Shown piece by piece: positions 1,195-50,282 of a stretch of 64,000 nt of DNA; the first letter of the stretch is position 1; each line of letters begins with the position of its first letter. The DNA lies in IMG/VR virus record IMGVR_UViG_3300042934_000980, positions 156,496 through 220,495 of that record. The stretch is one strand, 5' to 3'. A program made the position numbers and the translations under genes. A model generated the notes under the pieces. The model was given only the letters and a program-made list of their open reading frames with translations. It was not told the DNA's origin and searched no databases.

Positions 1195-1202
1195 GTAATA
1201 TA
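1195..1202 (-). promoter_or_regulatory. phiKZ-type early promoter core TATATTAC
   Basis: GTAATATA on + strand, intergenic, upstream of 566..1159; matches published phiKZ early consensus. Confidence 0.7.
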
Positions 1203-1246
1203 GGTCTAAGATGCTCTGTAAGTTAAAAATAAAAACACTGAATAAC

Positions 1247-20178: not shown

Positions 20179-20186
20179 GTAATATA
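20179..20186 (-). promoter_or_regulatory. early promoter core TATATTAC
   Basis: exact motif, intergenic. Confidence 0.7.
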
Positions 20187-20231
20187 GGTTTCAGATTGGC
20201 CAAGACCTCCCCTTATTAGGACGTCTTTACC

Positions 20232-22119: not shown

Positions 22120-23841
22120 TTAGTGCGTCTTGACCGCGTGCAGCTTGTCGCCCAACAGCAGGCTGCTGGCATTGGCCAAGATCTTGGCTGTTTGCAGGCC
22201 GCCCTTAAGCGCTGTGACCAACGCGAACGCAGTGTCGTACACACCCAGGTCTTGAGCTTGTCCCGTTTCACCGGTGGCCAAGTTGGTGATGTCCGGTACA
22301 TTACCTGCGTACTTTTTGAGCAGCTCTGGCAGGTCAGGTATGTACGCACCCTCGTCGCTTTGCTTGGCCAGATGCACGTACGGCACGCACACCAGCTCGG
22401 CTAGGCGTTCGAGGATCTTTGCATCCGTCTTGTCCCGGGCGAAGGTCACCGGATACAGGCTTTCCTTATTCTTGGGGGCAAGGACCACATGGTCTTGGTG
22501 ATGGCAGTGATCATAAAGATCCGACAACACCAACAATCCAGCCTTCATCAACGAGGTACCGGCGCCTGGCAGAATGCCGTTGTCCAACGCACTCTTGACC
22601 GCCTTGACGACGTCCTCGAACCGATCCAAACGCTCCTTCACGTCCGAATAGGTTTCACCGCCCACAAAGATGGTGACCAACTGGCCGCGCAGGTTACGGA
22701 TCCGGCTTTCGTTGAACTTGGCGCGTACGCTGAAACGGTCACCCATTTCGTACCCGCTCAGTTCTTGCTCGATGGCATCAGCACGCTGCTGCACGCGCAC
22801 TAAGGCATTAGCATCCAGCTCGCTCACCAACGAGCGGCTGTTGCCGACCGTGACGTGCATGTTCGGAACGTTGAACTCCGCACCCACCGCGTCTTGCAGC
22901 TGAGTGAACATCGGCACGCCAAAGATGGTGGCGATATCACCCATGATCAAGCTGCCCACCGAACCACCGGCGTTGGTGTTGATCCCCACGAAAGTTGGGC
23001 CGCCCAGGAAGGTGTTGACCATTCCACCCATGCGTGCACTGGATTTTACTTGGTTATTGATGTTGGCCATGACAGCCCCCACCTCATGCTCGATCGAGCG
23101 GGCAATGATAAGGATGTGGTCGGTCTGGCCCTTGAACTGGTCATGCAGCTTGATCAGCTCATCGGTCAGGTCCGCACCACGCCCCAGCGTACCGTCGATC
23201 ACCACCGGGATGAAGTTTTCCAGCAAAGTGTCGGCACCGTTGCCGTACTTGCTAAAGCCTGGGTTACTGAAACTCATGTTCAGTGGCAGGCCGTTGCTGT
23301 GCACCACCTTGTCTTCGCTGCTCTGGCCTTCCTTGAGCTCGATGGCAGGGTAACGATCACCCGACTGCTTGTAGATGTCGGTGATGATGGTCGACAGCTC
23401 GTGGTCGCTGTTGGAGGAGGTCAGGGCCAGCTTGAACAACCGATCGTCTTCCGGGGTAACCTGGATGGCGAGGCTGCGCAGCTTCTTGCCGATCTCACCG
23501 ATCACTTGCTCGATGAAACGCTGTTCACGAAAGCTCTTGAACTGGCTGAGCACGCTGTACAGTTCAGCGGTCAACATGACGGTGGTGGTGGTGCCATCGC
23601 CACACTCGTGGTCGGTCTTGATCGCCGCTTCAACGATCACCCGGTTAATGACCTCATCACGCGGGTCATCGAACTTGATGGACTTGGCGACCGTCACGCC
23701 ATCCTTGGTGACCTTAACCGAGGTGCCGGTGCCGATCAAAGCGAGTTTGCCATTGGGACCCATGGTGGCCACAACTGCTTGGTGTACCTTGGTCATGACG
23801 TCTTTGACCATGTCCTGGGTGTTATCCAAAGTCAGCAGCAT
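22120..23841 (-). CDS. groEL: GroEL-like phage chaperonin (EL gp146 type)
   Basis: TMGPNG, VTKDGVTVAKSI, GDGTTT, VGGETYSDVKERLDRFEDVVKAVKSALDNGILPG; no GGM tail; no GroES gene adjacent. Confidence 0.95.
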   Translation of the reverse strand: MLLTLDNTQDMVKDVMTKVHQAVVATMGPNGKLALIGTGTSVKVTKDGVTVAKSIKFDDPRDEVINRVIVEAAIKTDHECGDGTTTTVMLTAELYSVLSQFKSFREQRFIEQVIGEIGKKLRSLAIQVTPEDDRLFKLALTSSNSDHELSTIITDIYKQSGDRYPAIELKEGQSSEDKVVHSNGLPLNMSFSNPGFSKYGNGADTLLENFIPVVIDGTLGRGADLTDELIKLHDQFKGQTDHILIIARSIEHEVGAVMANINNQVKSSARMGGMVNTFLGGPTFVGINTNAGGSVGSLIMGDIATIFGVPMFTQLQDAVGAEFNVPNMHVTVGNSRSLVSELDANALVRVQQRADAIEQELSGYEMGDRFSVRAKFNESRIRNLRGQLVTIFVGGETYSDVKERLDRFEDVVKAVKSALDNGILPGAGTSLMKAGLLVLSDLYDHCHHQDHVVLAPKNKESLYPVTFARDKTDAKILERLAELVCVPYVHLAKQSDEGAYIPDLPELLKKYAGNVPDITNLATGETGQAQDLGVYDTAFALVTALKGGLQTAKILANASSLLLGDKLHAVKTH

Positions 23842-23895: not shown

Positions 23896-23903
23896 GTAAT
23901 ATA
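23896..23903 (-). promoter_or_regulatory. early promoter core TATATTAC
   Basis: exact motif about 55 nt upstream of chaperonin. Confidence 0.7.
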
Positions 23904-23998
23904 GGTTTCAGATTTGCTTACAAAAAACAAAATGGCGGCATAGAGGTTAGGGACCTCCCCTCAAGCCTGTTGGCCCGACTAAAGGGGAGGGTGTTGCT

Positions 23999-27663: not shown

Positions 27664-27671
27664 GTAATATA
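27664..27671 (-). promoter_or_regulatory. early promoter core TATATTAC
   Basis: exact motif, intergenic. Confidence 0.7.
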
Positions 27672-27691
27672 GGTTTGAAAACAACTGTAAC

Positions 27692-29595: not shown

Positions 29596-29638
29596 ACTAC
29601 TCCAGCAGCCAAGGCGTTAGCCCGGCTGCTGGAGTAGT
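29596..29638 (-). terminator. terminator hairpin
   Basis: 15-bp stem ACTACTCCAGCAGCC/GGCTGCTGGAGTAGT with long T tail on minus strand. Confidence 0.85.
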
Positions 29639-29651
29639 GGTTGGTTACGAT

Positions 29652-31607
29652 TTAGTCGAGACTAACAATCCCTTTCTTCAAGGTAAACCCGAAGAACTCC
29701 CGAACAGCTGGATCTTTGGGCATGGGTACCATAAACCGCATGGCCCTGCCGAAGTAATCGCTGTCAGGTTTGACCATCACCACCAGATTGTCCAGGTTAC
29801 CCCCGGCGTTCTGGAAGTGCTCGATCGCCCCTGCCTTGTCCGCCTCGTTTGCAACAACCATTACGGCTTGCCACTGCGAGGTACGGGTCAGGTGATGGAC
29901 CAACCCCACACACGCCGGCGGAATCTGTTCGTCCGTGTACAGCAACGGAAGCACCAATTCCTCGGTCGTCATTTCCAGATCACCCTCAGGGAAACGCTCA
30001 GCGCCCAGGTAGTTGCCCCGCTTTGTGCAGGTATGAACAAAGCCCTGACCTTGGGTGTCGACCGACCGATGGTAAATCTTTGTCCGGTCTGTATCGGAGA
30101 CGATCAACGTGCTGAGGTAGAAGCGACCTTCCGGCAGAATGGGTGGGTTCAGGTCAAACCCTGGCGGGATCACCGTATCACCCGGCGCCAATTCCATTGC
30201 TTTGAGATCCTTCACCAACCGAACACCGAAGTGTTTAGTCCAGCCTTCTGCCGTGGACAGCTCTTTAGCCCCGTCCAGCTTTTTCCAACGTTGCATTTCT
30301 CCGTAAGGGGAAGCTTTCAAACCACCCGGCAACAGCGACTTTTCAGCACTGCGGCTTTCGGAGCCTGAGAAAAGGTCTACCCCTTTGAGATTGGCAGCCA
30401 GGTTGCCCAAGATACTGCCCCCGGTTCCACGCTGAGCTTGTTCATCGCGCATGGTTTCCATGCGTTCGACCAGAACAGCACTGAGGTCCCGATCGGTAAA
30501 GCCACGCAATTGAGCATCCAGCTCTGGGCCAAACGGAGTACCGTTTTGACGCCATTTTGCGATCTCTAACAACTGGTCGGTGTCAAGGTCACGCAACACT
30601 GTCAGATTTTTCTGAGACACGTTACCGCCTGGCGCATCAGTCAGGATAAACCTTGACAACGGTTCACCAGTGATGTCTCGCGCAATGAGGTGATCTAGCG
30701 GTACCAGTGGCTTGGCGGTGTTGAGGTATGTGCCAGCCTCCGCAACCATGCCGCCGACAGGTGCTGAGAAGATGTTAGAATCAACATCCGTCATGCCCCG
30801 CCCCGGAAGGATGACTTGACGCAGTTGATTCACCTGAACCAGCTCGATATTAGGGATCGGGGCATCAGGTAACTTCGCCACCAGTTCCCGCACCCGCGCC
30901 GCGAACAACAGAGCTTCCAGCTCTTTGGTGTTAAGGTAGCCCTCCACGTAGTAGGTACCATCTACTTGGTCGTAATACCTGTCACGCTGTCCAGTGACTG
31001 ATTCCTCAGCCTCTTTGATCGTCTTGAACTCTGGCAGACCACGGGATGGGTCGGTTTCCAGCATTTTGTGCACTGCACTTTTAAGCGCTTCACGCATGGC
31101 TTCAGAAGTCAGTTCGTGATGGTCTTCAACCGTTTGGTACGCGAACAGTACCTGGTTGATGATCGCTTTGCCCTTGATGAAGCCAGAGCCCGTGTCGGTA
31201 CCGTAGGTGGATTCGTACCAATCACACCAGTCCGGATTGACCGTCAGGATGCGCCCTTCATCACCCGCCATAGCCAGCTCAGGCATCTCAGACACGCCGT
31301 GAGATGGCATCCCTGGGTAACGCCCTTCTGCTACCGCCAAACGCCGTGAGAGCCAACGCAGACGCTCCTTGACCGCGGTCATGATGGCGATCTTGGGAAG
31401 GCCCTCGATATGACCCATCATGACTGCCAGTTCGGCGTTCATATCACGGTCGTAGTTCATGAAGGCGTAGTTGGCCAGCTCATCATCACTGAGGTCAGCC
31501 GCTGGCAAATCTTCCCGCGGGCGGTTCAAGTAGTGAGCGAAGTCGTCGTCACGACCTTCGACCAACCAACGCATATCTACAACCGGTTGTTTATCTTTAA
31601 AAGGCAT
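29652..31607 (-). CDS. multidomain hypothetical protein
   Basis: 651 aa; N-terminal DLSDDELAN..TAVKERLRWLSRRL segment looks like a phage/prophage module fused to unrelated domains. Confidence 0.8.
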   Translation of the reverse strand: MPFKDKQPVVDMRWLVEGRDDDFAHYLNRPREDLPAADLSDDELANYAFMNYDRDMNAELAVMMGHIEGLPKIAIMTAVKERLRWLSRRLAVAEGRYPGMPSHGVSEMPELAMAGDEGRILTVNPDWCDWYESTYGTDTGSGFIKGKAIINQVLFAYQTVEDHHELTSEAMREALKSAVHKMLETDPSRGLPEFKTIKEAEESVTGQRDRYYDQVDGTYYVEGYLNTKELEALLFAARVRELVAKLPDAPIPNIELVQVNQLRQVILPGRGMTDVDSNIFSAPVGGMVAEAGTYLNTAKPLVPLDHLIARDITGEPLSRFILTDAPGGNVSQKNLTVLRDLDTDQLLEIAKWRQNGTPFGPELDAQLRGFTDRDLSAVLVERMETMRDEQAQRGTGGSILGNLAANLKGVDLFSGSESRSAEKSLLPGGLKASPYGEMQRWKKLDGAKELSTAEGWTKHFGVRLVKDLKAMELAPGDTVIPPGFDLNPPILPEGRFYLSTLIVSDTDRTKIYHRSVDTQGQGFVHTCTKRGNYLGAERFPEGDLEMTTEELVLPLLYTDEQIPPACVGLVHHLTRTSQWQAVMVVANEADKAGAIEHFQNAGGNLDNLVVMVKPDSDYFGRAMRFMVPMPKDPAVREFFGFTLKKGIVSLD

Positions 31608-33392: not shown

Positions 33393-34049
33393 TTATGCTT
33401 TAAACGAGGTTGCATCACCCGACGCCATCCGGATTAAGCCCACATCGTGAGCCTTCTCCATCTTGATGCCGTTATGCAGCGCATGGAACAAGACCCAACG
33501 CAGGCTTGGAACCCCAGGCAGCGAGGACGTCAGGGGTGGCTCACCCTTGCCAAAGGCGGCCTTGTACTGCTGACGGGTGATCTTGAGGGTCGAACCGATG
33601 ATCATCTCAGCCACTTGGCTGGTGTGTACACGGGCCAGGTTCTCGTCCCGGATCACGGTACTCAGCCAGCTGCGGATCCCCACGTTGCTGCCAGAGGTGG
33701 CAAAGACCGAGGGGTCGCTGTCTTTGATCCGGGCAATCCAGCCGCGGGCGCGGATGTCACTGATAAAGGCAAACAGCCGCTGGCACTGCTGCATGTTTTC
33801 AGCCAAGGCTATCAGCTGATTGCTGGAGTTGCGGTGACGCTCCCCCACGCACTCCACCGAGCTTAGGTAAGTCAAGTGGTCGACCATGTCGTCCAGCTTG
33901 CTCAGGCCTGCAATGATGGCGTCGGTGGCACCAGCGTCGTGCTTGGTCATGTACCAGTCAACCCACTTACCGTTAAGGCTGACAATGGTCGGATCAAAAA
34001 CTGCGGGTTCTTCTTCAATCAAGATGGTGTTGGTGGTGTTCATGTTCAA
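33393..34049 (-). CDS. EPSxF-WxxW family protein
   Basis: EEPAVFD..NGKWVDWY and SLRWVLFH motifs. Confidence 0.75.
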   Translation of the reverse strand: MNMNTTNTILIEEEPAVFDPTIVSLNGKWVDWYMTKHDAGATDAIIAGLSKLDDMVDHLTYLSSVECVGERHRNSSNQLIALAENMQQCQRLFAFISDIRARGWIARIKDSDPSVFATSGSNVGIRSWLSTVIRDENLARVHTSQVAEMIIGSTLKITRQQYKAAFGKGEPPLTSSLPGVPSLRWVLFHALHNGIKMEKAHDVGLIRMASGDATSFKA

Positions 34050-34064
34050 TACCGAAAAGAAAGG

Positions 34065-34586
34065 TTAAAAGTTTTGACCTAAGCCTGAGAACCCATATTC
34101 CCAGAACATTGCCACCATGCCCGTGAACTTGCGTCCATTGGCCGCTTCCCACTCATCCATTGCCCAGTCCATGAGGTCAGTTTCCTCATCCATCGTGAAC
34201 TTGTAATCGGGGGAGTAGAGTTTAAAGCTGTCCTCAAACTGATCGATGTCATCCAGCTTGAGCGGGTACACAGTTTTGCGGTCCAGCACCATGATACCGT
34301 GGTAACCCTGTTTGAGTAGGGATGGAATCAGTTCCATGTACTCGCTGATCAGGTTGTAGGTATCGTCTAAGTGCGCCAGCGGTTTGGGCGCTGACAGCAA
34401 ATAGCGAAACAGCCGTTTTTGCAGGTACTCGGGGTACTCGGGCTGGATTTTGAGCACAAACTTTTTAAGCTTGAGCGGGTTGGTGAACTTCTGATCCACA
34501 ATGCGCTTGATGGCCAAGTATTCAACAACAATCGGCGCCTGTTCGTTCAGATCAAGGGTCGGTACTTCTTTGACGGTGTCTTTCAC
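34065..34586 (-). CDS. hypothetical protein
   Basis: GTG start in GTGA overlap with stop of 34583..34975 (ORF track starts at 34676). Confidence 0.7.
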   Translation of the reverse strand: MKDTVKEVPTLDLNEQAPIVVEYLAIKRIVDQKFTNPLKLKKFVLKIQPEYPEYLQKRLFRYLLSAPKPLAHLDDTYNLISEYMELIPSLLKQGYHGIMVLDRKTVYPLKLDDIDQFEDSFKLYSPDYKFTMDEETDLMDWAMDEWEAANGRKFTGMVAMFWEYGFSGLGQNF

Positions 34587-34975
34587 AGCGCAACTTCCCG
34601 GGACAACATCAGTTGACCGTCTGCGTGGGTTTCCAACCAGTCCAAGTCCCGGCGGTACTTGGCGTAGATCACCCAACGAAACGAGAGCACGCGGCGTTTA
34701 ATGCCCGCTTTCTTGAACTCTTCTTGGTAGATGCTCATGGCGGGCTCATCGCCCAGATCACCGACCGGCCGCGGCGCTTCTGCCATCAGACTTTCGATGA
34801 TCCTGCTGCCGTACTCGAACGCTTTGAGGATCGAGGTTTCGGCTTTGCGCGAGTACCAGAGCATCCATTCGCTGCCTGGTTGCCCTACGTTTACGCCAAA
34901 GATGCTTGGCTCGTCCTCGGCTGGGGTGTAGTGGTGAGAAGGGGTACGCCCATTTGGCGCAACTATGCTGTTCAT
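34583..34975 (-). CDS. EPSxF-WxxW family protein
   Basis: YTPAEDEPSIF..SEWMLWY and SFRWVIY. Confidence 0.75.
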   Translation of the reverse strand: MNSIVAPNGRTPSHHYTPAEDEPSIFGVNVGQPGSEWMLWYSRKAETSILKAFEYGSRIIESLMAEAPRPVGDLGDEPAMSIYQEEFKKAGIKRRVLSFRWVIYAKYRRDLDWLETHADGQLMLSREVAL

Positions 34976-35604
34976 TCTCTTTTCCTTAGTACATTGACAT
35001 GAATAATGCGATTGTCTTCAAACTGCTCTAAGGGGTAAAGGACTTCATTAAGCCATCCCCCAATGTAGACTTCTAAGTAGCGCGTGCTGCGCGCCTTTTC
35101 CTTAAAGATCAAATGCAAGCCGTGGTCCACTTTAAAGCCGACCAACATCTTGCCCATCTTCATCAACGCTTCCAGTATGTCCCCCAGTACCACCAGTGTA
35201 ATGTTGCGCATGGGGGTTTTGTACATCAGGCGCTCTTTGACAAAGTGGTGAAACTCTTTGGTTAACCCTGACGAACGAAACGGGGAGCACTCAATGGTGT
35301 CCAAGTACACCCGCCTTACACTGAGAAAATCCCCAGTGTATTCAGGAACACGGCTGGTGATGAGAAACTCATCAATCCCCATACCCCTTAACTGTTTACC
35401 CTTCACCCACACAAACGCTGAATGGGTCAGCACACTGTTGTTAGCGTGCGGGGTTTTTAACACACGGTTTGCGTAACTTTTTACAAAAGCAGAAACGCCA
35501 CAGCCGCCTGTAGCCACTTCTTCCACGTAGGGATAAAGCCGCTTAAGGGAGCTGTGTAAATCCTTTACTTGCCGTGCGTTGGTAAGTGTTGCAATTTTGT
35601 CCAT
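34972..35604 (-). CDS. hypothetical protein
   Basis: 210 aa, ATGA overlap. Confidence 0.75.
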   Translation of the reverse strand: MDKIATLTNARQVKDLHSSLKRLYPYVEEVATGGCGVSAFVKSYANRVLKTPHANNSVLTHSAFVWVKGKQLRGMGIDEFLITSRVPEYTGDFLSVRRVYLDTIECSPFRSSGLTKEFHHFVKERLMYKTPMRNITLVVLGDILEALMKMGKMLVGFKVDHGLHLIFKEKARSTRYLEVYIGGWLNEVLYPLEQFEDNRIIHVNVLRKRE

Positions 35605-35630
35605 GGGTACTACTCATGAAGACTATTGGG

Positions 35631-35876
35631 TTAAGCCCGCAGCAAAGGGTGGATCCCTCGTCTTAGGAGCTCTTCTCTAGCCAAGAACAAGTTGCTCTGA
35701 TCGAACAACAATTGCCCTTGGTGTGGGTCGACACACATCATTTTGTAATCTGTGTGTTCGAGCCTAACCATAGCTTCCAACCGCCACGCTTCGGATCTTC
35801 GCAGATAAGAAATGTGGTGACGCGATTTCTTCTTGTTATTAAACTGTTGACGGGAGATGAACAACAAAACGCTCAT
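35631..35876 (-). CDS. hypothetical protein
   Basis: 81 aa. Confidence 0.6.
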   Translation of the reverse strand: MSVLLFISRQQFNNKKKSRHHISYLRRSEAWRLEAMVRLEHTDYKMMCVDPHQGQLLFDQSNLFLAREELLRRGIHPLLRA

Positions 35877-35879
35877 GCG

Positions 35880-36230
35880 TTAAAGAGTCCTATCGTTTTC
35901 CATATCGGTTCGATCCATCTCATCGAGCACCAGGCGAGCCTTACCGCACTTGCACTGGGTCTGTGAGAGGGCTTTAAAGCCGTAGGAGGACACCACCAAA
36001 GCCCGACCCTCTGCGAACGTTTGTATGCACACAGAGGCGCCTTGGGCGGGGTGTTTCACTTGGCGGATAGTACTCATGATCGACACACCGTGGACCGCTT
36101 CGGTGTAGTAATCAATGAACTCCTCCAACGATGCTTGCACAGAATTGGCCGGGAGGTTGGCAAACAATGCAGTGAAACGTTTGCGCACCTCCTCGTCCAC
36201 CTGAGGGTTAAACACAAGCTCAGGTTCCAT
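35880..36230 (-). CDS. hypothetical protein
   Basis: 116 aa in operon. Confidence 0.65.
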   Translation of the reverse strand: MEPELVFNPQVDEEVRKRFTALFANLPANSVQASLEEFIDYYTEAVHGVSIMSTIRQVKHPAQGASVCIQTFAEGRALVVSSYGFKALSQTQCKCGKARLVLDEMDRTDMENDRTL

Positions 36231-36232
36231 CG

Positions 36233-36607
36233 TTACATCCTTTTCAAAGCAGCCGCCAATTGCATGGCTTCTTCTGGGGTGAGGTGGTCACGGCGTGCAA
36301 CGTCCAACACCCACGCTAAGGAGATGTAATCGGTGCCGGCTACGTACATGCTAGGAGGCCTGGGTGGGAGTGTTACCCGTTGGGTAAGCAGCTCCTCACG
36401 GATGCGGTTACGTAGTTCGACGGCAACGCTTACAACGTCGTAGTTGGGGCGTTTGAGGCTGTAGGGACGGCCGCTGTCACGTCCAAACACTTGGATGTGG
36501 CTAAACCAGCTGGTCCACTCAATCGGCACCCCGGTGTCCTTGTCCGAGAATACCGACGGCTCATCCGCAGAAGGGGTATAAACAGTGAGGGGATCTTCTG
36601 GGTTCAT
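36233..36607 (-). CDS. EPSxF-WxxW family protein
   Basis: YTPSADEPSVF..IEWTSWF and SLAWVLD. Confidence 0.75.
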   Translation of the reverse strand: MNPEDPLTVYTPSADEPSVFSDKDTGVPIEWTSWFSHIQVFGRDSGRPYSLKRPNYDVVSVAVELRNRIREELLTQRVTLPPRPPSMYVAGTDYISLAWVLDVARRDHLTPEEAMQLAAALKRM

Positions 36608-37140
36608 TTGGTCTCCTTACCCGGATCGTGGTATTTGATTTTAACCAGGTACATGTCACTTGGGTCGATGGGCAAGATCTCAACGTTCATGCGCATCTTT
36701 TCCTGGAATTCTCGGTCCATCATTTGACTTGCTCCTGCCAACCATGCCAAGTCAAAGTCGGTACAACCGTGCTGGTGCTGGTACCATTTCACCCATTCAG
36801 GGTTCAGGTAACGTTTCTCCCAAGGTTGGGTCAGGGAGGGTTCTGGCATCAGGCTAACAGAGGTGTTTTCCATCGGGGGTGAGTCCTTGACGTTGTTCAC
36901 CACAAGCCTTGGGCGTAACTGGGCTTGCAGTTCTTTGATCAGTTGTTCGGTATTGAGGCGCGAGGCCGGTGCAGCCTTTTTGACCACCTGCAGTGGTTGA
37001 GGGTGGGCAAAGGGCTGGCTTAAAAAGTCTGCCACAGGGTCATGGGTTACGGGCTTGGGTCCTGCACTGATTACGTCTTTAATACGCTTTAGAAAGGCTT
37101 TTAGCATGCCAACCTCACAAAAATAAATAACCCGATTCAC
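36604..37140 (-). CDS. protein with partial EPS-WxxW motif
   Basis: PEPSL..LNPEWVKWY. Confidence 0.7.
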   Translation of the reverse strand: MNRVIYFCEVGMLKAFLKRIKDVISAGPKPVTHDPVADFLSQPFAHPQPLQVVKKAAPASRLNTEQLIKELQAQLRPRLVVNNVKDSPPMENTSVSLMPEPSLTQPWEKRYLNPEWVKWYQHQHGCTDFDLAWLAGASQMMDREFQEKMRMNVEILPIDPSDMYLVKIKYHDPGKETK

Positions 37141-37153
37141 CCCAAGGTATAAA

Positions 37154-37184
37154 CTAACCAGTAGGGAAAACCCCTACTGGTTAG
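37154..37184 (-). terminator. terminator hairpin
   Basis: 13-bp stem CTAACCAGTAGGG/CCCTACTGGTTAG. Confidence 0.75.
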
Positions 37185-37192
37185 CTCAACAC

Positions 37193-37666
37193 TTACGCTT
37201 TCAGAGGCATTGGAACGAGCTCTTCATGCAGCTCACCTGTGGTGTATTCAAAACCCGGCGTACCGGCTTGCAAAGACACCAAGTCATACCCGACGGTATA
37301 GGCTTCGGTAAAGCTTACGTTGTGTTTGTGCTTGTAGTGAAGAACAAACGCCATGGAGACCAGGGCCACATCTTTCAACATGGCTTGTGGTTCAGGGGCG
37401 TTCGGGTCAATGTAACGGCGCGGTTCGCGCTCCAGGTGGTCATACAGGGCGTTGCCGATGTTGGACGCCATCTGGTGGCTGAGGGCGAACTTGTTCATGA
37501 ACCAGTTGACCCAGCGAGGATGCAACACGCCCTCACCGCGGGTGAACATGCTAGGCTCAGTTGCCTCAGGTTGATAAGCTGTTTTGAACACAGGGTCTTG
37601 GTGCAGGTTTTCGTACGCCTTCGCCATTACGACTGGGTGTGCTACTACGTTGTGTTGGTTGATCAC
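37193..37666 (-). CDS. EPSxF-WxxW family protein
   Basis: YQPEATEPSMF..HPRWVNWF and SMAFVLH; GTG start with GAGG SD. Confidence 0.75.
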   Translation of the reverse strand: MINQHNVVAHPVVMAKAYENLHQDPVFKTAYQPEATEPSMFTRGEGVLHPRWVNWFMNKFALSHQMASNIGNALYDHLEREPRRYIDPNAPEPQAMLKDVALVSMAFVLHYKHKHNVSFTEAYTVGYDLVSLQAGTPGFEYTTGELHEELVPMPLKA

Positions 37667-37840
37667 GGCCTTGTACCTCTCGATAAAGTTTGGATGGGAA
37701 GGTTAAACATCTCCGGGGTGCTGCTCTCAATACCGGTAATGCCCAACTACGCTCCGGTGTTGTGGTGCCTTACCTGGCAAAACACTTAAGACTGCACCCT
37801 CCCGCCACATAGAGTCAGCATTGGAAGGGTTTGTACATGT

Positions 37841-37993
37841 TTACATGTAGCGTCGGTTCCTTGTAATACGGCCGAACTGAGCGCTCTGGCTGATGGACTT
37901 TTTATCCTTTCTGCTCAGGTCATGGTGTATGAACCCTTCGGGGCAGATGGACCTGGTGATATGTCCAAACAGCATTTGAGCTTTCTTTTTCAT
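37841..37993 (-). CDS. possible 50-aa basic peptide
   Basis: MKKKAQMLFGHITRSICPEGFIHHDLSRKDKKSISQSAQFGRITRNRRYM in an otherwise empty gap; no clear SD. Confidence 0.4.
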   Translation of the reverse strand: MKKKAQMLFGHITRSICPEGFIHHDLSRKDKKSISQSAQFGRITRNRRYM

Positions 37994-38050
37994 AAGGAAA
38001 TACCCAAAGGAGTTAAATAATAAAATTTAGCCAAGCAAAAACAAAAGGGG

Positions 38051-38078
38051 TAAGAGAGCCCCGTGAAGGGCTCTCTTA
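38051..38078 (-). terminator. terminator hairpin
   Basis: TAAGAGAGCCC/GGGCTCTCTTA with T-rich tail. Confidence 0.8.
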
Positions 38079-38090
38079 GATCACTGCTTG

Positions 38091-39665
38091 TTACAGCCCG
38101 GCCGCTGCGCCTTTGATACCGAACGCAGCTGTTGCTGGCATGGCTGGAACTGGGAGCGACGGCACGTCAGCAGCAGAGCCTTCAACGCCTTGACCGGCGC
38201 CAACGACTTTGCCTTCGATGAACCGACCGGCTTTGGAGCCCAGAGCACCGACTGCCATACCCAGCATGCCTGCCGCCACATAGCGACCGAACTGGCCTTC
38301 GATGTGCTTGTCGGTTTGCTCGGCCAGGAAGAAGGATGCACCCGCACCCACCAGCGTACCGACACCGGCGCCGACGGTGATCTGACCGGCATGGCCCATT
38401 TCCAGAGCACCGCCGACCAACGCCGAACCGACCGCTACCCAGCTCGACCGCACGCCTTCGTCACGATCACCCATGATCGAGTAACGCGACTTGGGTGCAG
38501 TGCTGCCGCCGCTGCTGCCCATGGCTTGCTCGGCGATCTTCTTGGCGATGTCCGGGTGCTTGGCCAGAATCCACAGGGTGAAGGTTTCTTCCAGCTCGCT
38601 GTTGCTTTCGCACGCCTTGAAGAAGGTTTCGTCAACCGACAGGGTGTCAGGCTGTGCGCTCACAGTTTCCTGGAACTTGGGGTGCAGCTTGATGAACTCT
38701 TGGAACAGTTCACCGCGGGCTTTGTCGCTGTCGTAGCCGAACACAACCAGGCCGGCGACGAAAGACATTACGTTTTCAGTTTTCATGGAAGTGGCCTTTT
38801 CAGAAGTGTTGGTTTCGGTGGAAGTGGTGGTGGTTGGGTTGGCGGCGTTGGTGTCTACAGAAGTAGCGTCGCGGAAGTCTTTCAGGTTGTTGTTCATGTC
38901 AGTGTGTTCCAAGGCAGGCGCGGCTACAGCAGGGGCTGGCTGCGCAGTTTCAGTTGGCTGGTTATCAGCGGTTTGGGTGGGTGCTTTGTCGAGCTCGATC
39001 TTGTGCAGGACAACTTCTTTGAAATCTTCACGCAGCTCTTTGGATTGAGTGCGCAGGAAGGTAAAGAACTTGTCATCGGTGTTGGAGCTGCGCATCTGTT
39101 GCTGAACCGTCAAGAACTGAGCGAGGACCTCTTTGCTCTGCGCGGCCATCCAGATGCTGTAGATGCTAGCCCGGCGGTCTTCGTCGTACTCGCCAAACCC
39201 TGCTGCAAACAGGGTATTGACAAAGTCCAACATTTCCTGGTCACTGATCTCGTGAACTGCACCGCCCACGATTGAGGACTTCAGTTGATCTTCCTTGATC
39301 ACATGCTCGATGACATGGGCCACGTCATCACCGCCTTTGGCACCGGCTTGAATCTCCACGCTGCCGTGCAGTTCATCGACCGGGATCAGGGACGGCTCTT
39401 TATGTTCCTGTGTCACGCTGCGCAGCAACGCCGGGTTGGCCTTACGCACTTGGTTCATGGTGAAGGTGGTTTTGAAGGCGGCGTTAACATCGCGCAGCAA
39501 AGCCTGCCGATCGTTTTTGGCGATCAGGCTTTCGTCGTACATCTTGGAGCGGAATACTGCAAGCAGCATGTCCTGCTCGCCACCTGCAGCTTTGGCAGCT
39601 TCGATAGCCTTGATGGTTTCATCAGCGGCGTCGTGGAAGTTTGGCAGGTCTTTTTTAGTGGTCAT
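38091..39665 (-). CDS. large protein with C-terminal glycine-zipper membrane segments
   Basis: 524 aa; T/A-rich linker; GxxxG repeats in VAVGSALVGGA..GAGVGTLVGAGA..AAGMLGMAVGALG. Confidence 0.8.
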   Translation of the reverse strand: MTTKKDLPNFHDAADETIKAIEAAKAAGGEQDMLLAVFRSKMYDESLIAKNDRQALLRDVNAAFKTTFTMNQVRKANPALLRSVTQEHKEPSLIPVDELHGSVEIQAGAKGGDDVAHVIEHVIKEDQLKSSIVGGAVHEISDQEMLDFVNTLFAAGFGEYDEDRRASIYSIWMAAQSKEVLAQFLTVQQQMRSSNTDDKFFTFLRTQSKELREDFKEVVLHKIELDKAPTQTADNQPTETAQPAPAVAAPALEHTDMNNNLKDFRDATSVDTNAANPTTTTSTETNTSEKATSMKTENVMSFVAGLVVFGYDSDKARGELFQEFIKLHPKFQETVSAQPDTLSVDETFFKACESNSELEETFTLWILAKHPDIAKKIAEQAMGSSGGSTAPKSRYSIMGDRDEGVRSSWVAVGSALVGGALEMGHAGQITVGAGVGTLVGAGASFFLAEQTDKHIEGQFGRYVAAGMLGMAVGALGSKAGRFIEGKVVGAGQGVEGSAADVPSLPVPAMPATAAFGIKGAAAGL

Positions 39666-39732
39666 TTTGACAACTCCGATTTGGTTATTACAACTAAAGG
39701 TTAGAAAGATTTGTGTGCATTACACTACCTGA

Positions 39733-39740
39733 ATAGTACA
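39733..39740 (-). promoter_or_regulatory. variant early promoter (TGTACTAT)
   Basis: same flanking GGTTTGAAA and CTGTAA elements as TATATTAC sites. Confidence 0.5.
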
Positions 39741-39781
39741 GGTTTGAAAGAAACTGTAAGTTAAAAATAAAAGAACAAACA

Positions 39782-39824: not shown

Positions 39825-40169
39825 TTAAGCAGGTTGAGAAGTAACGTGTACTGCTGGATGGTCTTTGCGCGCTACCAGCAACATCTCAGCGCCCAAGGAC
39901 AGCAAGTGCTGAGGAGCAACGCCTGCCACCTTGCTGATCATGGTGGTGCCGTTCTCATGGTGGTAACGCGACAGGTCTTCGCCCAACACGATCCAGACAC
40001 CGGTGTTCAGGCCTTCAAACAATCCTTGGGTTTCCCCGTCGTTGAAGTGCGCCGCTTCACCCGGGGCAACATAGGCAAGCAGGGTGACCTGTTTACCGAT
40101 GTTCTCTTTGACCTTGAAAGCGCCCATGATGATCGCCCGCGCCCCTGGAAATAAATTAGATGCTCTCAT
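39825..40169 (-). CDS. hypothetical protein
   Basis: 114 aa, ATGA overlap with 2H gene. Confidence 0.7.
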   Translation of the reverse strand: MRASNLFPGARAIIMGAFKVKENIGKQVTLLAYVAPGEAAHFNDGETQGLFEGLNTGVWIVLGEDLSRYHHENGTTMISKVAGVAPQHLLSLGAEMLLVARKDHPAVHVTSQPA

Positions 40170-40606
40170 ACTTTACCCAGTCCGTATGCTTGGTTGGTGA
40201 AGGTCAACGCACGACCCGCCCAACCAGCCAGAGCCGACTTGAGTTTGAGGATGTCGTAATCGTTGAAGTCGTACGTCAGTGACATGTGTGGTAGGTACCC
40301 GTCGTAAGGACTTTGGTACCCCGCCTCGCGCAAACGCCGGTGTTCTTCTTGCAGTTCTTTGCTGGTCAGGTGAAAGACCAGCCCATCGCCCAGCACATCG
40401 ATCGACACCACGTACGCGGTAAACACCCGCTTAGGATCAAGCTCGGTAAAGGGCTTATCGATCTCACGCTTGCGCTTGTCGTACATCACGGTGCAGTGAA
40501 AGTCGTGGGTGGGCGCAGGGGGAATCCCAGCAGCCATCACGGCGGCCATCAGTTCGGCTTCGATGTCGTCGGTGAGTTCGACGCTGATGTAATGATAATC
40601 GGGCAT
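40166..40606 (-). CDS. 2H phosphoesterase, Acb1/T4 gp57B-like anti-CBASS nuclease candidate
   Basis: two HxT/S motifs FHCTVMY and YLPHMSLTY, spaced as in T4 57B (IHSTICY, YTPHITLSY); 146 aa. Confidence 0.75.
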   Translation of the reverse strand: MPDYHYISVELTDDIEAELMAAVMAAGIPPAPTHDFHCTVMYDKRKREIDKPFTELDPKRVFTAYVVSIDVLGDGLVFHLTSKELQEEHRRLREAGYQSPYDGYLPHMSLTYDFNDYDILKLKSALAGWAGRALTFTNQAYGLGKV

Positions 40607-40615
40607 AACGGTGTC

Positions 40616-41458
40616 CTAGTGACTGTTGAGTTCGACGTGGGAGAGGGGGAAACGAGGGTCGTCGAATTTCAGCTTGAAGCCCGATGCGTTCTTGTGTCCG
40701 CCGCCGCCAAAGGCTTCGGCTACCAGGTTCACGTGCTGGCCGCCGTCTTTACGGCTGCGCAAGGAGAACTGGCGTTCATCCACCCCGTCGTTATAGATAA
40801 CGGCGTAATCATTGTCCTGAGCCAGCAGGTGGCCGATCTCAGAGGCGTACATGTAAGGAGCGTTGACCACCGGCACATCTTGTCCATTGATCTTCATGCG
40901 TCGTACATTGGGCATGAACTTACCGATGTCGCTCTTTTCTTTGCGGATCAACAAAATGCCTTCTGAGATCAGTTCCATCTCAGGGCGCTTCATGATCTCG
41001 GAGAACGTCTCCAAGGACAGCGGGTAGCTGAAGGCCCCCATGGTCCAAGGTTTGGTGTTCTCCAATTTGAACTGGAACAGGTCGCGGTCCTGTACGTACA
41101 ACAGCTGCACAGGAGGGCGCTCAGAGCCAAAGAAGTAGTTCCAGGTCACCATCGCACCAGAGTGCGCTTGATCGATCTCAAACAGGCCTTCCAGGTCCTT
41201 AGCGGCGGTCTCATGGTGGTCCAAGATCACCACGTTGTTGTGCTGCATCAATTGCACAATCTGGTCGCGCTTGTAGCTGAAGTCGACCAAGTAGATGGTG
41301 CAACCGGTCAGTCCCTCAGGAACAGGGTGACCGTATTGTGCTGCGTGGAACTCCACCACGCCTGGGCCAAAGAATTGCTCAACCACCCAGGCAGAGGCGG
41401 CGCCGTCCAGGCAGTTAGCGTGGTAGATACATACCACACGATTATTTTCCTGAGTCAT
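40616..41458 (-). CDS. DHH/DHHA1 phosphoesterase
   Basis: YHANCLDG, LVDFS, ILDHHET, QDRDL, FSLRS, GGGGHKNASGF. Confidence 0.9.
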   Translation of the reverse strand: MTQENNRVVCIYHANCLDGAASAWVVEQFFGPGVVEFHAAQYGHPVPEGLTGCTIYLVDFSYKRDQIVQLMQHNNVVILDHHETAAKDLEGLFEIDQAHSGAMVTWNYFFGSERPPVQLLYVQDRDLFQFKLENTKPWTMGAFSYPLSLETFSEIMKRPEMELISEGILLIRKEKSDIGKFMPNVRRMKINGQDVPVVNAPYMYASEIGHLLAQDNDYAVIYNDGVDERQFSLRSRKDGGQHVNLVAEAFGGGGHKNASGFKLKFDDPRFPLSHVELNSH

Positions 41459-50262: not shown

Positions 50263-50270
50263 GTAATATA
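50263..50270 (-). promoter_or_regulatory. early promoter core TATATTAC
   Basis: exact motif, intergenic. Confidence 0.7.
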
Positions 50271-50282
50271 GGTTTCAAAAAT

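What the first reader, a model, noticed from the sequence alone, without database searches (positions are those of the whole stretch)
33393..37666. Local array of five divergent paralogs defined by a bipartite EPSxF-WxxW / S-h-x-W-V motif
Seen, motif 1: EEPAVF..GKWVDWY (33393), YTPAEDEPSIF..SEWMLWY (34583), YTPSADEPSVF..IEWTSWF (36233), PEPSL..PEWVKWY (36604) and YQPEATEPSMF..PRWVNWF (37193). Seen, motif 2 in four of them: SLRWVLFH, SFRWVIYA, SLAWVLDV and SMAFVLHY, followed by a short helix ending in A/H..G. The sequence between the two motifs is variable in length and content. Inference: the two motifs fold together as a conserved scaffold or docking unit that carries a variable insert. This suggests an expanding adaptor or effector family, for example cargo tagged for a common phage machine such as the nuclear shell or RNAP, or diversified anti-defence binders.
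Basis: partly seen in the sequence, partly recalled or inferred. Interest (0 to 1): 0.65.

Follow-up and report, generated by a model that had tools for sequence, protein, structure and literature searches.

The report
Unnamed protein domain family in EL-like phage
The five genes share a real, previously undescribed protein domain of about 110 residues, found only in relatives of Pseudomonas jumbo phage EL and kept as an old, ordered set of paralogs; its function is unknown, and it is most likely a non-enzymatic binding module.

Summary
All five minus-strand genes (A 33393-34043, B 34583-34975, C 36233-36607, D 36604-37107, E 37193-37666) carry the motifs. The strict motif 1 occurs in 4 of the genome's ORFs against 0.005 expected.

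Profile searches link B, C, E, the C-terminal half of A, and a sixth gene F outside the window. A wider search finds 120 protein clusters, all without names. Those traced sit on jumbo-phage contigs up to 236 kb with phiKZ-type genes.

There is no Pfam family, no solved relative and no fold match, although the AlphaFold models are confident.

Three corrections:
- A is a half-module plus a complete domain. Its motif 2 pairs with an overlooked second motif 1.
- D has only the motif-1 half.
- The stretch between the motifs is a fairly constant 45-60 residue helical segment, not a free insert.

The paralogs are old. Each has a 27-60% identical counterpart, in the same order, in another soil phage, always downstream of an Acb1 anti-CBASS gene.

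The family is present in EL and was not detected in phiKZ, OBP, 201phi2-1, SPN3US or RisingSun.

Function is inferred only: a conserved scaffold with variable, mostly acidic surfaces suggests binding modules.

The parts
33393..34043 (-). Gene A. 216 aa from the ATG; the ORF extends to a TTG at 34049. It is an N-terminal half-module followed by a complete domain.
   Evidence: A database copy (P0007) is identical from the ATG. Proteins with this architecture, 206-247 aa long, form at least 12 other clusters.
33870..34025 (-). Half-module of A (residues 9-60). It has motif 1 (EEPAVF...NGKWVDWY) and a following helix, with no detectable motif 2.
   Evidence: HMM domain iE 1e-4. hhalign against A3 gives probability 91% over residues 9-44.
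33402..33752 (-). Complete domain of A (residues 100-216). It has the overlooked motif 1 (DSDPSVF...RSW) and motif 2 (SLRWVL).
   Evidence: HMM built without A: full-sequence E 1.6e-8, match at residues 110-207. Wider HMM: iE 3e-22.
34583..34975 (-). Gene B, 130 aa, a single complete domain.
   Evidence: AlphaFold model with pLDDT 85. In a variant contig, 5 of 6 differences are synonymous.
36233..36607 (-). Gene C, 124 aa, a single complete domain. Its start overlaps the stop of D.
36604..37107 (-). Gene D. 167 aa from the ATG; the ORF extends to a GTG at 37140. It carries the motif-1 half-module only, at residues 95-151 (36688-36858).
   Evidence: HMM E 3.4e-4 among 1216 ORFs. hhalign probability 82.5%. 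Database gene call of 167 aa. A counterpart in L010 is 47% identical over 75 aa and also overlaps the C-like gene.
37193..37666 (-). Gene E, 157 aa with a GTG start. The complete domain is at residues 24-136.
   Evidence: The ortholog P0008 has the same length and a matching N-terminus.
31149..31265 (-). Possible further motif-1 half-module (VNPDWCDWY plus a helix) inside the 651-aa protein encoded at 29652-31607.
   Evidence: phmmer with D gives 0.004. HMM E 0.019. hhalign probability 89.5% over 39 columns. This is borderline.
34065..34586 (-). Interspersed gene X1, not a family member (173 aa from a GTG that overlaps the stop of B). It is conserved at the same position in L010.
34972..36230 (-). 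Three interspersed genes that are not family members (210, 81 and 116 aa). The 210-aa and 116-aa genes are conserved in the same order in L010.
37141..37195 (-). Strong RNA hairpin between E and D.
   Evidence: -30.5 kcal/mol, z-score -6.2.
38051..38078 (-). Terminator-like hairpin upstream of the block. It is followed by a 424-nt gap before E.
29596..29638 (-). Strong terminator-like hairpin (18 base pairs plus a T run) that closes the co-directional gene block.
40166..40606 (-). Acb1-family (anti-CBASS 2H phosphoesterase) gene upstream of the block. It is in the same relative position in L010.
   Evidence: Pfam PF23474, E 1.3e-15, 57.9 bits against a cut-off of 27. L010 counterpart 56% identical.

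Best explanation
The five genes encode members of a previously unnamed alpha+beta domain family of about 110 residues, restricted (as far as tested) to Pseudomonas phage EL and its uncultivated soil relatives.

The two motifs are the structural signature of one domain. Motif 1 (Y-x-P-x-x-D-E-P-S-x-F, about 10 residues, W-x-x-W) is an N-terminal extended strap that runs into helix 1. Motif 2 (S-L-x-W-V-I) is a short strand, a helix-capping serine and helix 3.

The window holds four complete domains (B, C, E and the C-terminal half of A). It also holds motif-1 half-modules in the N-terminal half of A, in D, and perhaps in the 651-aa protein. A sixth member, F, lies elsewhere in the genome and carries the domain at the C-terminus of a 419-aa protein.

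The paralogs are old and non-redundant. They sit in a fixed order in a tightly packed, co-directional gene block downstream of Acb1, and that block is conserved in another jumbo phage.

Inferred, not shown:
- Almost all conserved positions are aromatic, proline or helix-capping residues.
- No polar set of residues is invariant.
- Most domains are acidic.

From this the domain is most likely a non-enzymatic protein-binding scaffold whose variable surfaces give each paralog its own partner. Half-modules recur directly before complete domains: fused in A and in the B-like protein of L010, and translationally coupled in D-C. This suggests the half-module docks on a complete domain.
For: Family is real:
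- (see observation check).
- A profile of the 5-row alignment A2, searched against 1.84 billion cluster representatives, gives 120 clusters at E<=1e-3, 43 at <=1e-10 and 4 at <=1e-30.
- Signature over 104 members: P23 and W37 100%; Y16, E22, S24, F26 and V102 at least 90%; W40 86%; S98 85%; P78 83%.

One folded unit:
- AlphaFold model of B has pLDDT 85 and pTM 0.81.
- The same domain in F has block-mean pLDDT 75-96 with the same order of elements.

New family:
- No Pfam hit.
- Only phrog_31119, of unknown function, at 8e-5.
- No real relative among solved sequences.
- Foldseek against PDB, best E 2.8. Against BFVD, best E 0.7, an EL protein.
- Exhaustive VIA search, best Z 2.8. Atlas TM below 0.4.

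Host clade:
- tblastn finds only EL-group phages.
- EL gp89, gp92 and gp84 match the profile.
- The contigs traced for family members are 233-236 kb; the one checked for markers (L011) has phiKZ-type tail sheath and head protease.
- The genome's GroEL is 41% identical to EL's.

Old, syntenic paralogs:
-.

Non-enzymatic, acidic:
- Median domain pI 5.95, 86% below 7. H117 is conserved in only 59%.

Coding under constraint:
- 5 of 6 differences in B in a variant contig are synonymous.
Against: - There are no functional data of any kind: no expression timing, localisation, virion proteomics or partner.
- The complex prediction of D (85-178) with C gave no verdict (score 0.00), so docking of the half-module is pure inference from gene architecture.
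- I could not inspect model coordinates. Contact between motif 1 and motif 2 is inferred from the confident single-domain models and isolated beta-bridges at residues 23 and 26, not measured.
- Conserved E22, S24, E115 and H117 could still form a functional site in a subset of members.
- Conserved order and 27-60% orthologs fit core-like genes as well as accessory binders.
- Absence from the other phages rests on one profile search per genome.
Confidence: 0.55

Rival explanations
1. The proteins are anti-defence or host-takeover effectors: small acidic proteins that each bind and neutralise a different host factor.
For: - The block lies 2.5 kb downstream of an Acb1 anti-CBASS gene in the window and in L010.
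- The proteins are small and mostly acidic.
- Multiple diverged paralogs share a conserved core and have variable surfaces.
Against: - The link is guilt by association only.
- The paralog set is old and collinear between phages, not patchy or fast-turning as many counter-defence islands are.
- The array is near-identical in soil metagenome runs filed under several studies, though five of the seven holders may be the source sample.
- None of the five exact copies of the repeated promoter-like motif lies in front of the array.
Confidence: 0.2
2. The domain is a docking or addressing module that delivers different proteins to one common phage machine, such as the nuclear shell or import system, the RNA polymerase or the capsid.
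For: - The domain is appended to the C-terminus of otherwise unrelated N-terminal regions of 290-742 aa. It also occurs alone and in tandem.
- The motif-1 half-module occurs alone in other proteins: D and the 651-aa protein.
- EL is reported to encode chimallin (preprint 10.1101/2023.02.24.529968).
Against: - The family was not detected in phiKZ, 201phi2-1, OBP, SPN3US or RisingSun, so it cannot be a general chimallivirus signal.
- Most members are the domain alone, with no cargo attached.
- The conserved residues look buried and structural rather than like an exposed linear signal.
- I could not show chimallin in this genome. The phiKZ query also misses EL's chimallin, so that test is uninformative.
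Confidence: 0.15
3. The proteins are virion-internal (inner body or ejection) proteins. phiKZ-like phages are known to encode these as paralog families.
For: - F and its positional ortholog P0033 lie between the head maturation protease and thymidylate kinase.
- Paralogous inner-body protein families exist in phiKZ-like phages (my own knowledge; the SPN3US paper PMC5694885 turned up but I did not read it).
Against: - No PHROG head or virion family is hit.
- The array itself sits among non-structural genes (Acb1, DHH phosphoesterase, RNase H, ligase).
- There is no consistent protease-type cleavage motif (S/A/G-x-E) at a fixed position. This is from inspecting the five sequences, and the motif is from my own knowledge.
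Confidence: 0.07
4. The domain is a nucleic-acid-binding domain of the three-helix (HTH, homeodomain or HMG-box) type.
For: The top structural rows, although insignificant, are mostly HMG boxes, homeodomains and winged-helix regulators.
Against: - Best Z is 2.8 with rmsd 4-5 A over about 55 residues. The Foldseek E-values are at least 0.7. Both are at noise level.
- 86% of the domains are acidic.
Confidence: 0.03

Closest known systems
Pseudomonas phage EL gp89, gp92 and gp84 (hypothetical proteins; gp89 is probably what PHROG phrog_31119, of unknown function, represents)
   Same: They share the same domain signature. The profile matches gp89 at 7e-12, gp92 at 6e-11 and gp84 (motif-1 half only) at 6e-6. 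All three lie within a 5-kb stretch of EL.
   Different: In EL the domain sits at the C-terminus of 261-268 aa proteins, whereas B, C and E here are stand-alone domains. Identity to the window proteins is only about 27%. There is no functional annotation in either case.
Collinear block on a 236-kb soil metagenome contig (locus L010)
   Same: The order is Acb1, the 524-aa protein, then E-like (60% identity), D-like (47%), C-like (48%), 116-aa-like, 210-aa-like (47%), B-like (52%), X1-like and A-like (27%), all in the same order and direction.
   Different: The B-like protein there has an extra N-terminal half-module (248 aa). The D-like protein is 302 aa. There is one additional family member (L010 7522-8292). 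The homolog of the 114-aa gene sits at a different place.
HMG-box, homeodomain and winged-helix three-helix folds
   Same: These are the top rows of every structure search, and they are small helical domains with aromatic cores.
   Different: The scores are at noise level (Z at most 2.8, Foldseek E at least 0.7). This domain has four main helices plus short strands and an N-terminal strap, and it is acidic.
Paralogous small-protein families of phiKZ-like jumbo phages, for example inner-body proteins (own knowledge)
   Same: Several diverged paralogs are kept in one jumbo-phage genome, partly clustered.
   Different: There is no sequence or profile link, the family was not detected in phiKZ itself, and the surrounding genes are non-structural.

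Membership tests
New 'EPS-W' domain family (defined here by alignment A3) | Significant profile match over the whole domain (about 110 residues) | tested here: met
   Wider HMM full-sequence E among 1216 ORFs: B 1.5e-31, C 6e-30, E 1.6e-36, F 1.3e-32; A's C-terminal domain iE 3e-22 (these five are themselves in the model). An HMM built without A still finds A at 1.6e-8. Not met by D or by the N-terminal half of A, which match the first half only.
New 'EPS-W' domain family (defined here by alignment A3) | Motif 1 (E-P-S-x-F, then W-x-x-W) and motif 2 (S-h-x-W/F/Y-V-h) at a spacing of 45-60 residues | tested here: met
   Met by B, C, E, F and the C-terminal half of A. D and the N-terminal half of A have motif 1 only.
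New 'EPS-W' domain family (defined here by alignment A3) | Common predicted core: N-terminal strap, two helices, a short strand or helix, a strand, then two helices | tested here: met
   The models of B and of the domain in F show the same order of elements at high confidence. Only two members were modelled, and I could not superpose coordinates.
PHROG phrog_31119 (unknown function) | Significant HMM match | tested here: inconclusive
   B hits at E 8e-5 over residues 7-93. Only 5 of 104 family members hit, and A, C, D and E do not.
Any Pfam family | Match at or above the gathering score | tested here: not met
   No family for the five proteins or for the 104 members. No family for the 10 long fusion proteins scanned.
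HMG-box / HTH DNA-binding folds | Structural match clearly above background, and a basic surface | tested here: not met
   Best Z 2.8. Median pI 5.95.
Chimallivirus nuclear-import cargo or import factors | Localisation to, or import into, the phage nucleus; dependence on the import factors | not testable with these tools
   Sequence tools only. The family was not detected in phiKZ, 201phi2-1, OBP, SPN3US or RisingSun.
phiKZ-type inner-body or ejection proteins | Presence in virions, and processing by the head protease | not testable with these tools
   No virion proteomics at hand. No PHROG structural hit.

The most novel reading that the evidence does not exclude
The family is a new fold that works as a clade-specific modular docking system. 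Motif-1 half-modules, whether fused or on a separate and translationally coupled protein such as D, would clip onto complete domains. This would assemble a defined hetero-oligomer from the ordered paralog set, and it would recruit larger proteins such as F, the 651-aa protein and the 572-742 aa fusions to that assembly during infection.
Probability: 0.1. Interest if true: 0.7.

Novelty: new variant of a known kind. Interest (0 to 1): 0.42.

Why it matters
EL-like jumbo phages are a poorly studied branch of the nucleus-forming phages, and most of their genes have no assigned function. This work defines a domain family with 120 clusters, clear signature residues, a confident predicted structure with no known fold match, and a conserved gene block next to an anti-CBASS gene.

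That gives experimenters a concrete set of targets in a cultivable phage: EL gp84, gp89 and gp92. It also gives domain databases a candidate new entry.

If the half-module and complete-domain pairing reflects real docking, it would be a new modular interaction system in phages. If not, this remains a well-delimited family of unknown function.

Tried and rejected
- **Near-identity DNA search of the array in phage records:** no match.
- **Word-based protein search with B and with D:** each found only itself.
- **tblastn with E:** no match.
- **The search for related loci with alignment A2:** With E it found no relatives in viral contigs.
- **Structure searches of the B model** in PDB, BFVD, the exhaustive PDB set and the Atlas: nothing above noise.
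- **Language-model look-alikes:** uninformative.
- **PDB sequence profile:** only spurious hits to designed helical repeat proteins.
- **Model of full-length F:** the N-terminal 300 residues are low-confidence (overall pLDDT 57). The structural hits for that part (Z at most 6.5) are not trustworthy, so the fusion partner gives no functional clue.
- **Complex prediction of D (85-178) with C:** no verdict (score 0.00). The chains were folded without alignments and the partner's own fold was uncertain. This is neither evidence for nor against binding.
- **Chimallin in this genome:** phiKZ chimallin finds nothing here, but it also finds nothing in EL, so the test is uninformative. phiKZ-type RNA polymerase subunits are present.
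- **Literature searches** for EL gp84, gp89 or gp92 and for a described paralog family: nothing relevant.
- **Head-protease cleavage within motif 1:** rejected, because the P3 residue fits in only two of the five proteins.
- **Enzyme idea (a Glu-Ser-His triad from E22, S24 and H117):** rejected as a general feature, because H117 is conserved in only 59% of members and is absent from C and E.

Full report
**What the window is**

The window is bases 156496-220495 of a 220,495-bp virus record estimated at 96% complete. It encodes a GroEL-type chaperonin, an NAD-dependent ligase, an SbcC-like protein, a DHH phosphoesterase and large virion and tail proteins. The GroEL is 41% identical to that of Pseudomonas phage EL and 38% identical to that of Erwinia phage RisingSun. 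phiKZ-type RNA polymerase subunits are present elsewhere in the genome. Near-identical DNA occurs in soil metagenome runs filed under five studies, though five of the seven holders may be the source sample. This is therefore an uncultivated soil relative of the EL group of jumbo phages.

**Checking the observation**

The five ORFs lie on the minus strand:
- A, 33393-34049. The ATG at 34043 gives 216 aa.
- B, 34583-34975, 130 aa.
- C, 36233-36607, 124 aa.
- D, 36604-37140. The ATG at 37107 gives 167 aa.
- E, 37193-37666, 157 aa.

They contain the quoted strings.

A strict motif-1 pattern occurs in 4 of the genome's 1216 ORFs, against 0.005 expected from shuffles. Both motifs together occur in 4 ORFs against 0.

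phmmer against all ORFs of the genome links:
- B to E at 2e-4
- B to C at 5e-4
- C to E at 1e-3
- A to D at 1e-3
- B to a sixth gene F outside the window at 1.5e-6. F lies at genome 113972-115231 and encodes 419 aa, with the domain at residues 300-419.

An HMM of B, C, E and F finds A at 1.6e-8. The family is real.

**Corrections to the observation**

The quoted N-terminal motif 1 (residues 12-33) is a separate half-module. This architecture of half-module plus complete domain is itself conserved in at least 12 other clusters of 206-247 aa.

D matches only the first half of the domain, at residues 95-151. The HMM gives E 3.4e-4 and hhalign gives probability 82.5%. A similar half-module probably sits in the neighbouring 651-aa protein, with hhalign probability 89.5% and HMM E 0.019, which is borderline.

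The segment between the motifs is not a free insert. Over 104 members the W40-S98 distance has a median of 53 residues and an interquartile range of 48-61. The segment carries conserved L59, L63, E66, R69 and P78.

**How wide the family is**

A profile of five domains was searched against 1.84 billion cluster representatives. It found 120 clusters at E<=1e-3, 43 at <=1e-10 and 4 at <=1e-30.

Three architectures occur:
- stand-alone domains in proteins of 105-185 aa, which are the majority
- half-module plus complete domain, in proteins of about 205-250 aa
- a C-terminal domain on proteins of 290-742 aa with unrelated N-terminal regions that match no Pfam family among those scanned

No member examined carries an informative name. 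The longest contigs are 233-236 kb, and the one checked for markers (L011) carries phiKZ-type tail sheath and head protease.

Among cultivated phages the profile matches EL gp89, gp92 and gp84, with a weak fourth site. It matches nothing in phiKZ, OBP, 201phi2-1, SPN3US or RisingSun.

Over 104 members the signature (in B numbering) is: Y16, P18, D21, E22, P23 (100%), S24, F26, W37 (100%), W40, L63, E66, R69, P78, S98, W101, V102, E115, A116, H117 (59%) and G120.

**Relation to known families**

- No Pfam family is hit.
- Only phrog_31119, of unknown function, is hit, at 8e-5 and by 5 of 104 members.
- There is no real relative among solved sequences.
- AlphaFold2 models B confidently even with five sequences: pLDDT 85 and pTM 0.81. 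The elements are an extended N-terminal strap with isolated bridges at residues 23, 26 and 33, then helices 35-44 and 49-64, strand 81-83, helix 85-89, strand 95-98, and helices 99-109 and 113-129.
- The domain in the model of F has block-mean pLDDT of 75-96 with the same order of elements.
- No library gives a match above noise: Foldseek PDB E at least 2.8, BFVD E at least 0.7, exhaustive VIA Z at most 2.8, Atlas TM below 0.4.

A weak match does not prove that the fold is new, but nothing known is close.

**Age and context of the paralogs**

The window's paralogs are 16-30% identical to each other. Each has nearer relatives in other phages, at 47-59% identity.

On a 236-kb soil contig (L010) the whole block is collinear with the window: RNase H, then Acb1, then the 524-aa protein, then E-like (60%), D-like (47%), C-like (48%), 116-aa-like, 210-aa-like, B-like (52%), X1-like and A-like (27%), and further on the 158-aa-like gene.

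In both phages the stop of the D-type gene overlaps the start of the C-type gene.

F and its counterpart P0033 both lie between the head protease and thymidylate kinase.

This is therefore an old, ordered set of non-redundant paralogs, not a recent expansion.

The genes in the block are tightly packed or overlapping. The block is bounded by terminator-like hairpins at 38051-38078 and 29596-29638.

In a variant contig, 5 of 6 differences in B are synonymous.

**How it probably works (inference)**

- The conserved positions are almost all aromatic, proline, aliphatic or helix-capping residues. S98 comes directly before helix 99-109. S/T112-x-x-E115 comes before helix 113-129.
- No polar set of residues is invariant.
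- 86% of the domains are acidic, with a median pI of 5.95.

This pattern fits a rigid scaffold with variable surfaces. I therefore read the domain as a binding module rather than an enzyme or a nucleic-acid binder.

The domain also occurs at the C-terminus of unrelated larger proteins, and half-modules recur directly before complete domains, either fused or translationally coupled. Both features suggest modular docking. The one complex prediction I ran (D with C) gave no verdict, so it is not evidence either way.

The nearby Acb1 gene is conserved with the block, which keeps an anti-defence role open. That link is by association only.

**Verdict**

As a protein domain this appears undescribed. 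As a phenomenon, a conserved paralog family of unknown function in a jumbo phage is familiar.

Noticed in passing
window 40166-40606 (-) and 40616-41458 (-): An Acb1-family anti-CBASS 2H phosphoesterase (Pfam PF23474, E 1.3e-15) lies directly downstream of a DHH phosphoesterase (phrog_4771, E 3e-82). Acb1 keeps the same position relative to the paralog block in the metagenomic contig L010.
   Followed up: partly
window 1195-1205, 20179-20189, 23896-23906, 27664-27674, 50263-50273 (all on the minus strand): There are five exact copies of ACCTATATTAC. The longer EL-derived pattern TTTYAAACCTNNAYTATT matches 8 times at up to 3 mismatches, against 1.1 expected. The motif resembles EL's annotated 'putative phage promoter' and, from memory, the phiKZ early-promoter element TATATTAC. 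None of the five exact copies lies in front of the paralog array; a variant of the longer pattern sits at 39732-39749, before the 524-aa gene.
   Followed up: partly
window 37141-37195 (-): A very stable RNA hairpin (-30.5 kcal/mol, z-score -6.2) lies between genes E and D. It could be a terminator, an attenuator or a processing site inside the block.
   Followed up: partly
window 37667-38090: A 424-nt gap lies upstream of E. It follows a terminator-like hairpin and holds a 50-aa ORF (37841-37993, minus strand). The block's own promoter is presumably here but was not identified.
   Followed up: no
window 38091-39665 (-): This 524-aa protein is conserved next to Acb1 in L010 (41% identity over 235 aa). 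Its C-terminal 100 or so residues are glycine- and alanine-rich and hydrophobic, which could be a membrane-active or glycine-zipper segment.
   Followed up: no
genome 112478-113332 (-), outside the window (L016 8478-9332): The second called gene downstream of F, about 640 nt away, belongs to phrog_8902 (unknown function). In another phage one protein (P0122, 565 aa) fuses an N-terminal family domain to a phrog_8902 region. This links the two families by both neighbourhood and fusion.
   Followed up: partly
window 22120-23841 (-): A phage GroEL-type chaperonin is 41% identical to that of phage EL. It is a useful marker for placing this uncultivated phage.
   Followed up: yes
locus L010 7522-8292 (+): The related contig carries one more family member (256 aa) directly after the C-like gene. 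It has no counterpart in the window, so the copy number of the set is not strictly fixed.
   Followed up: no
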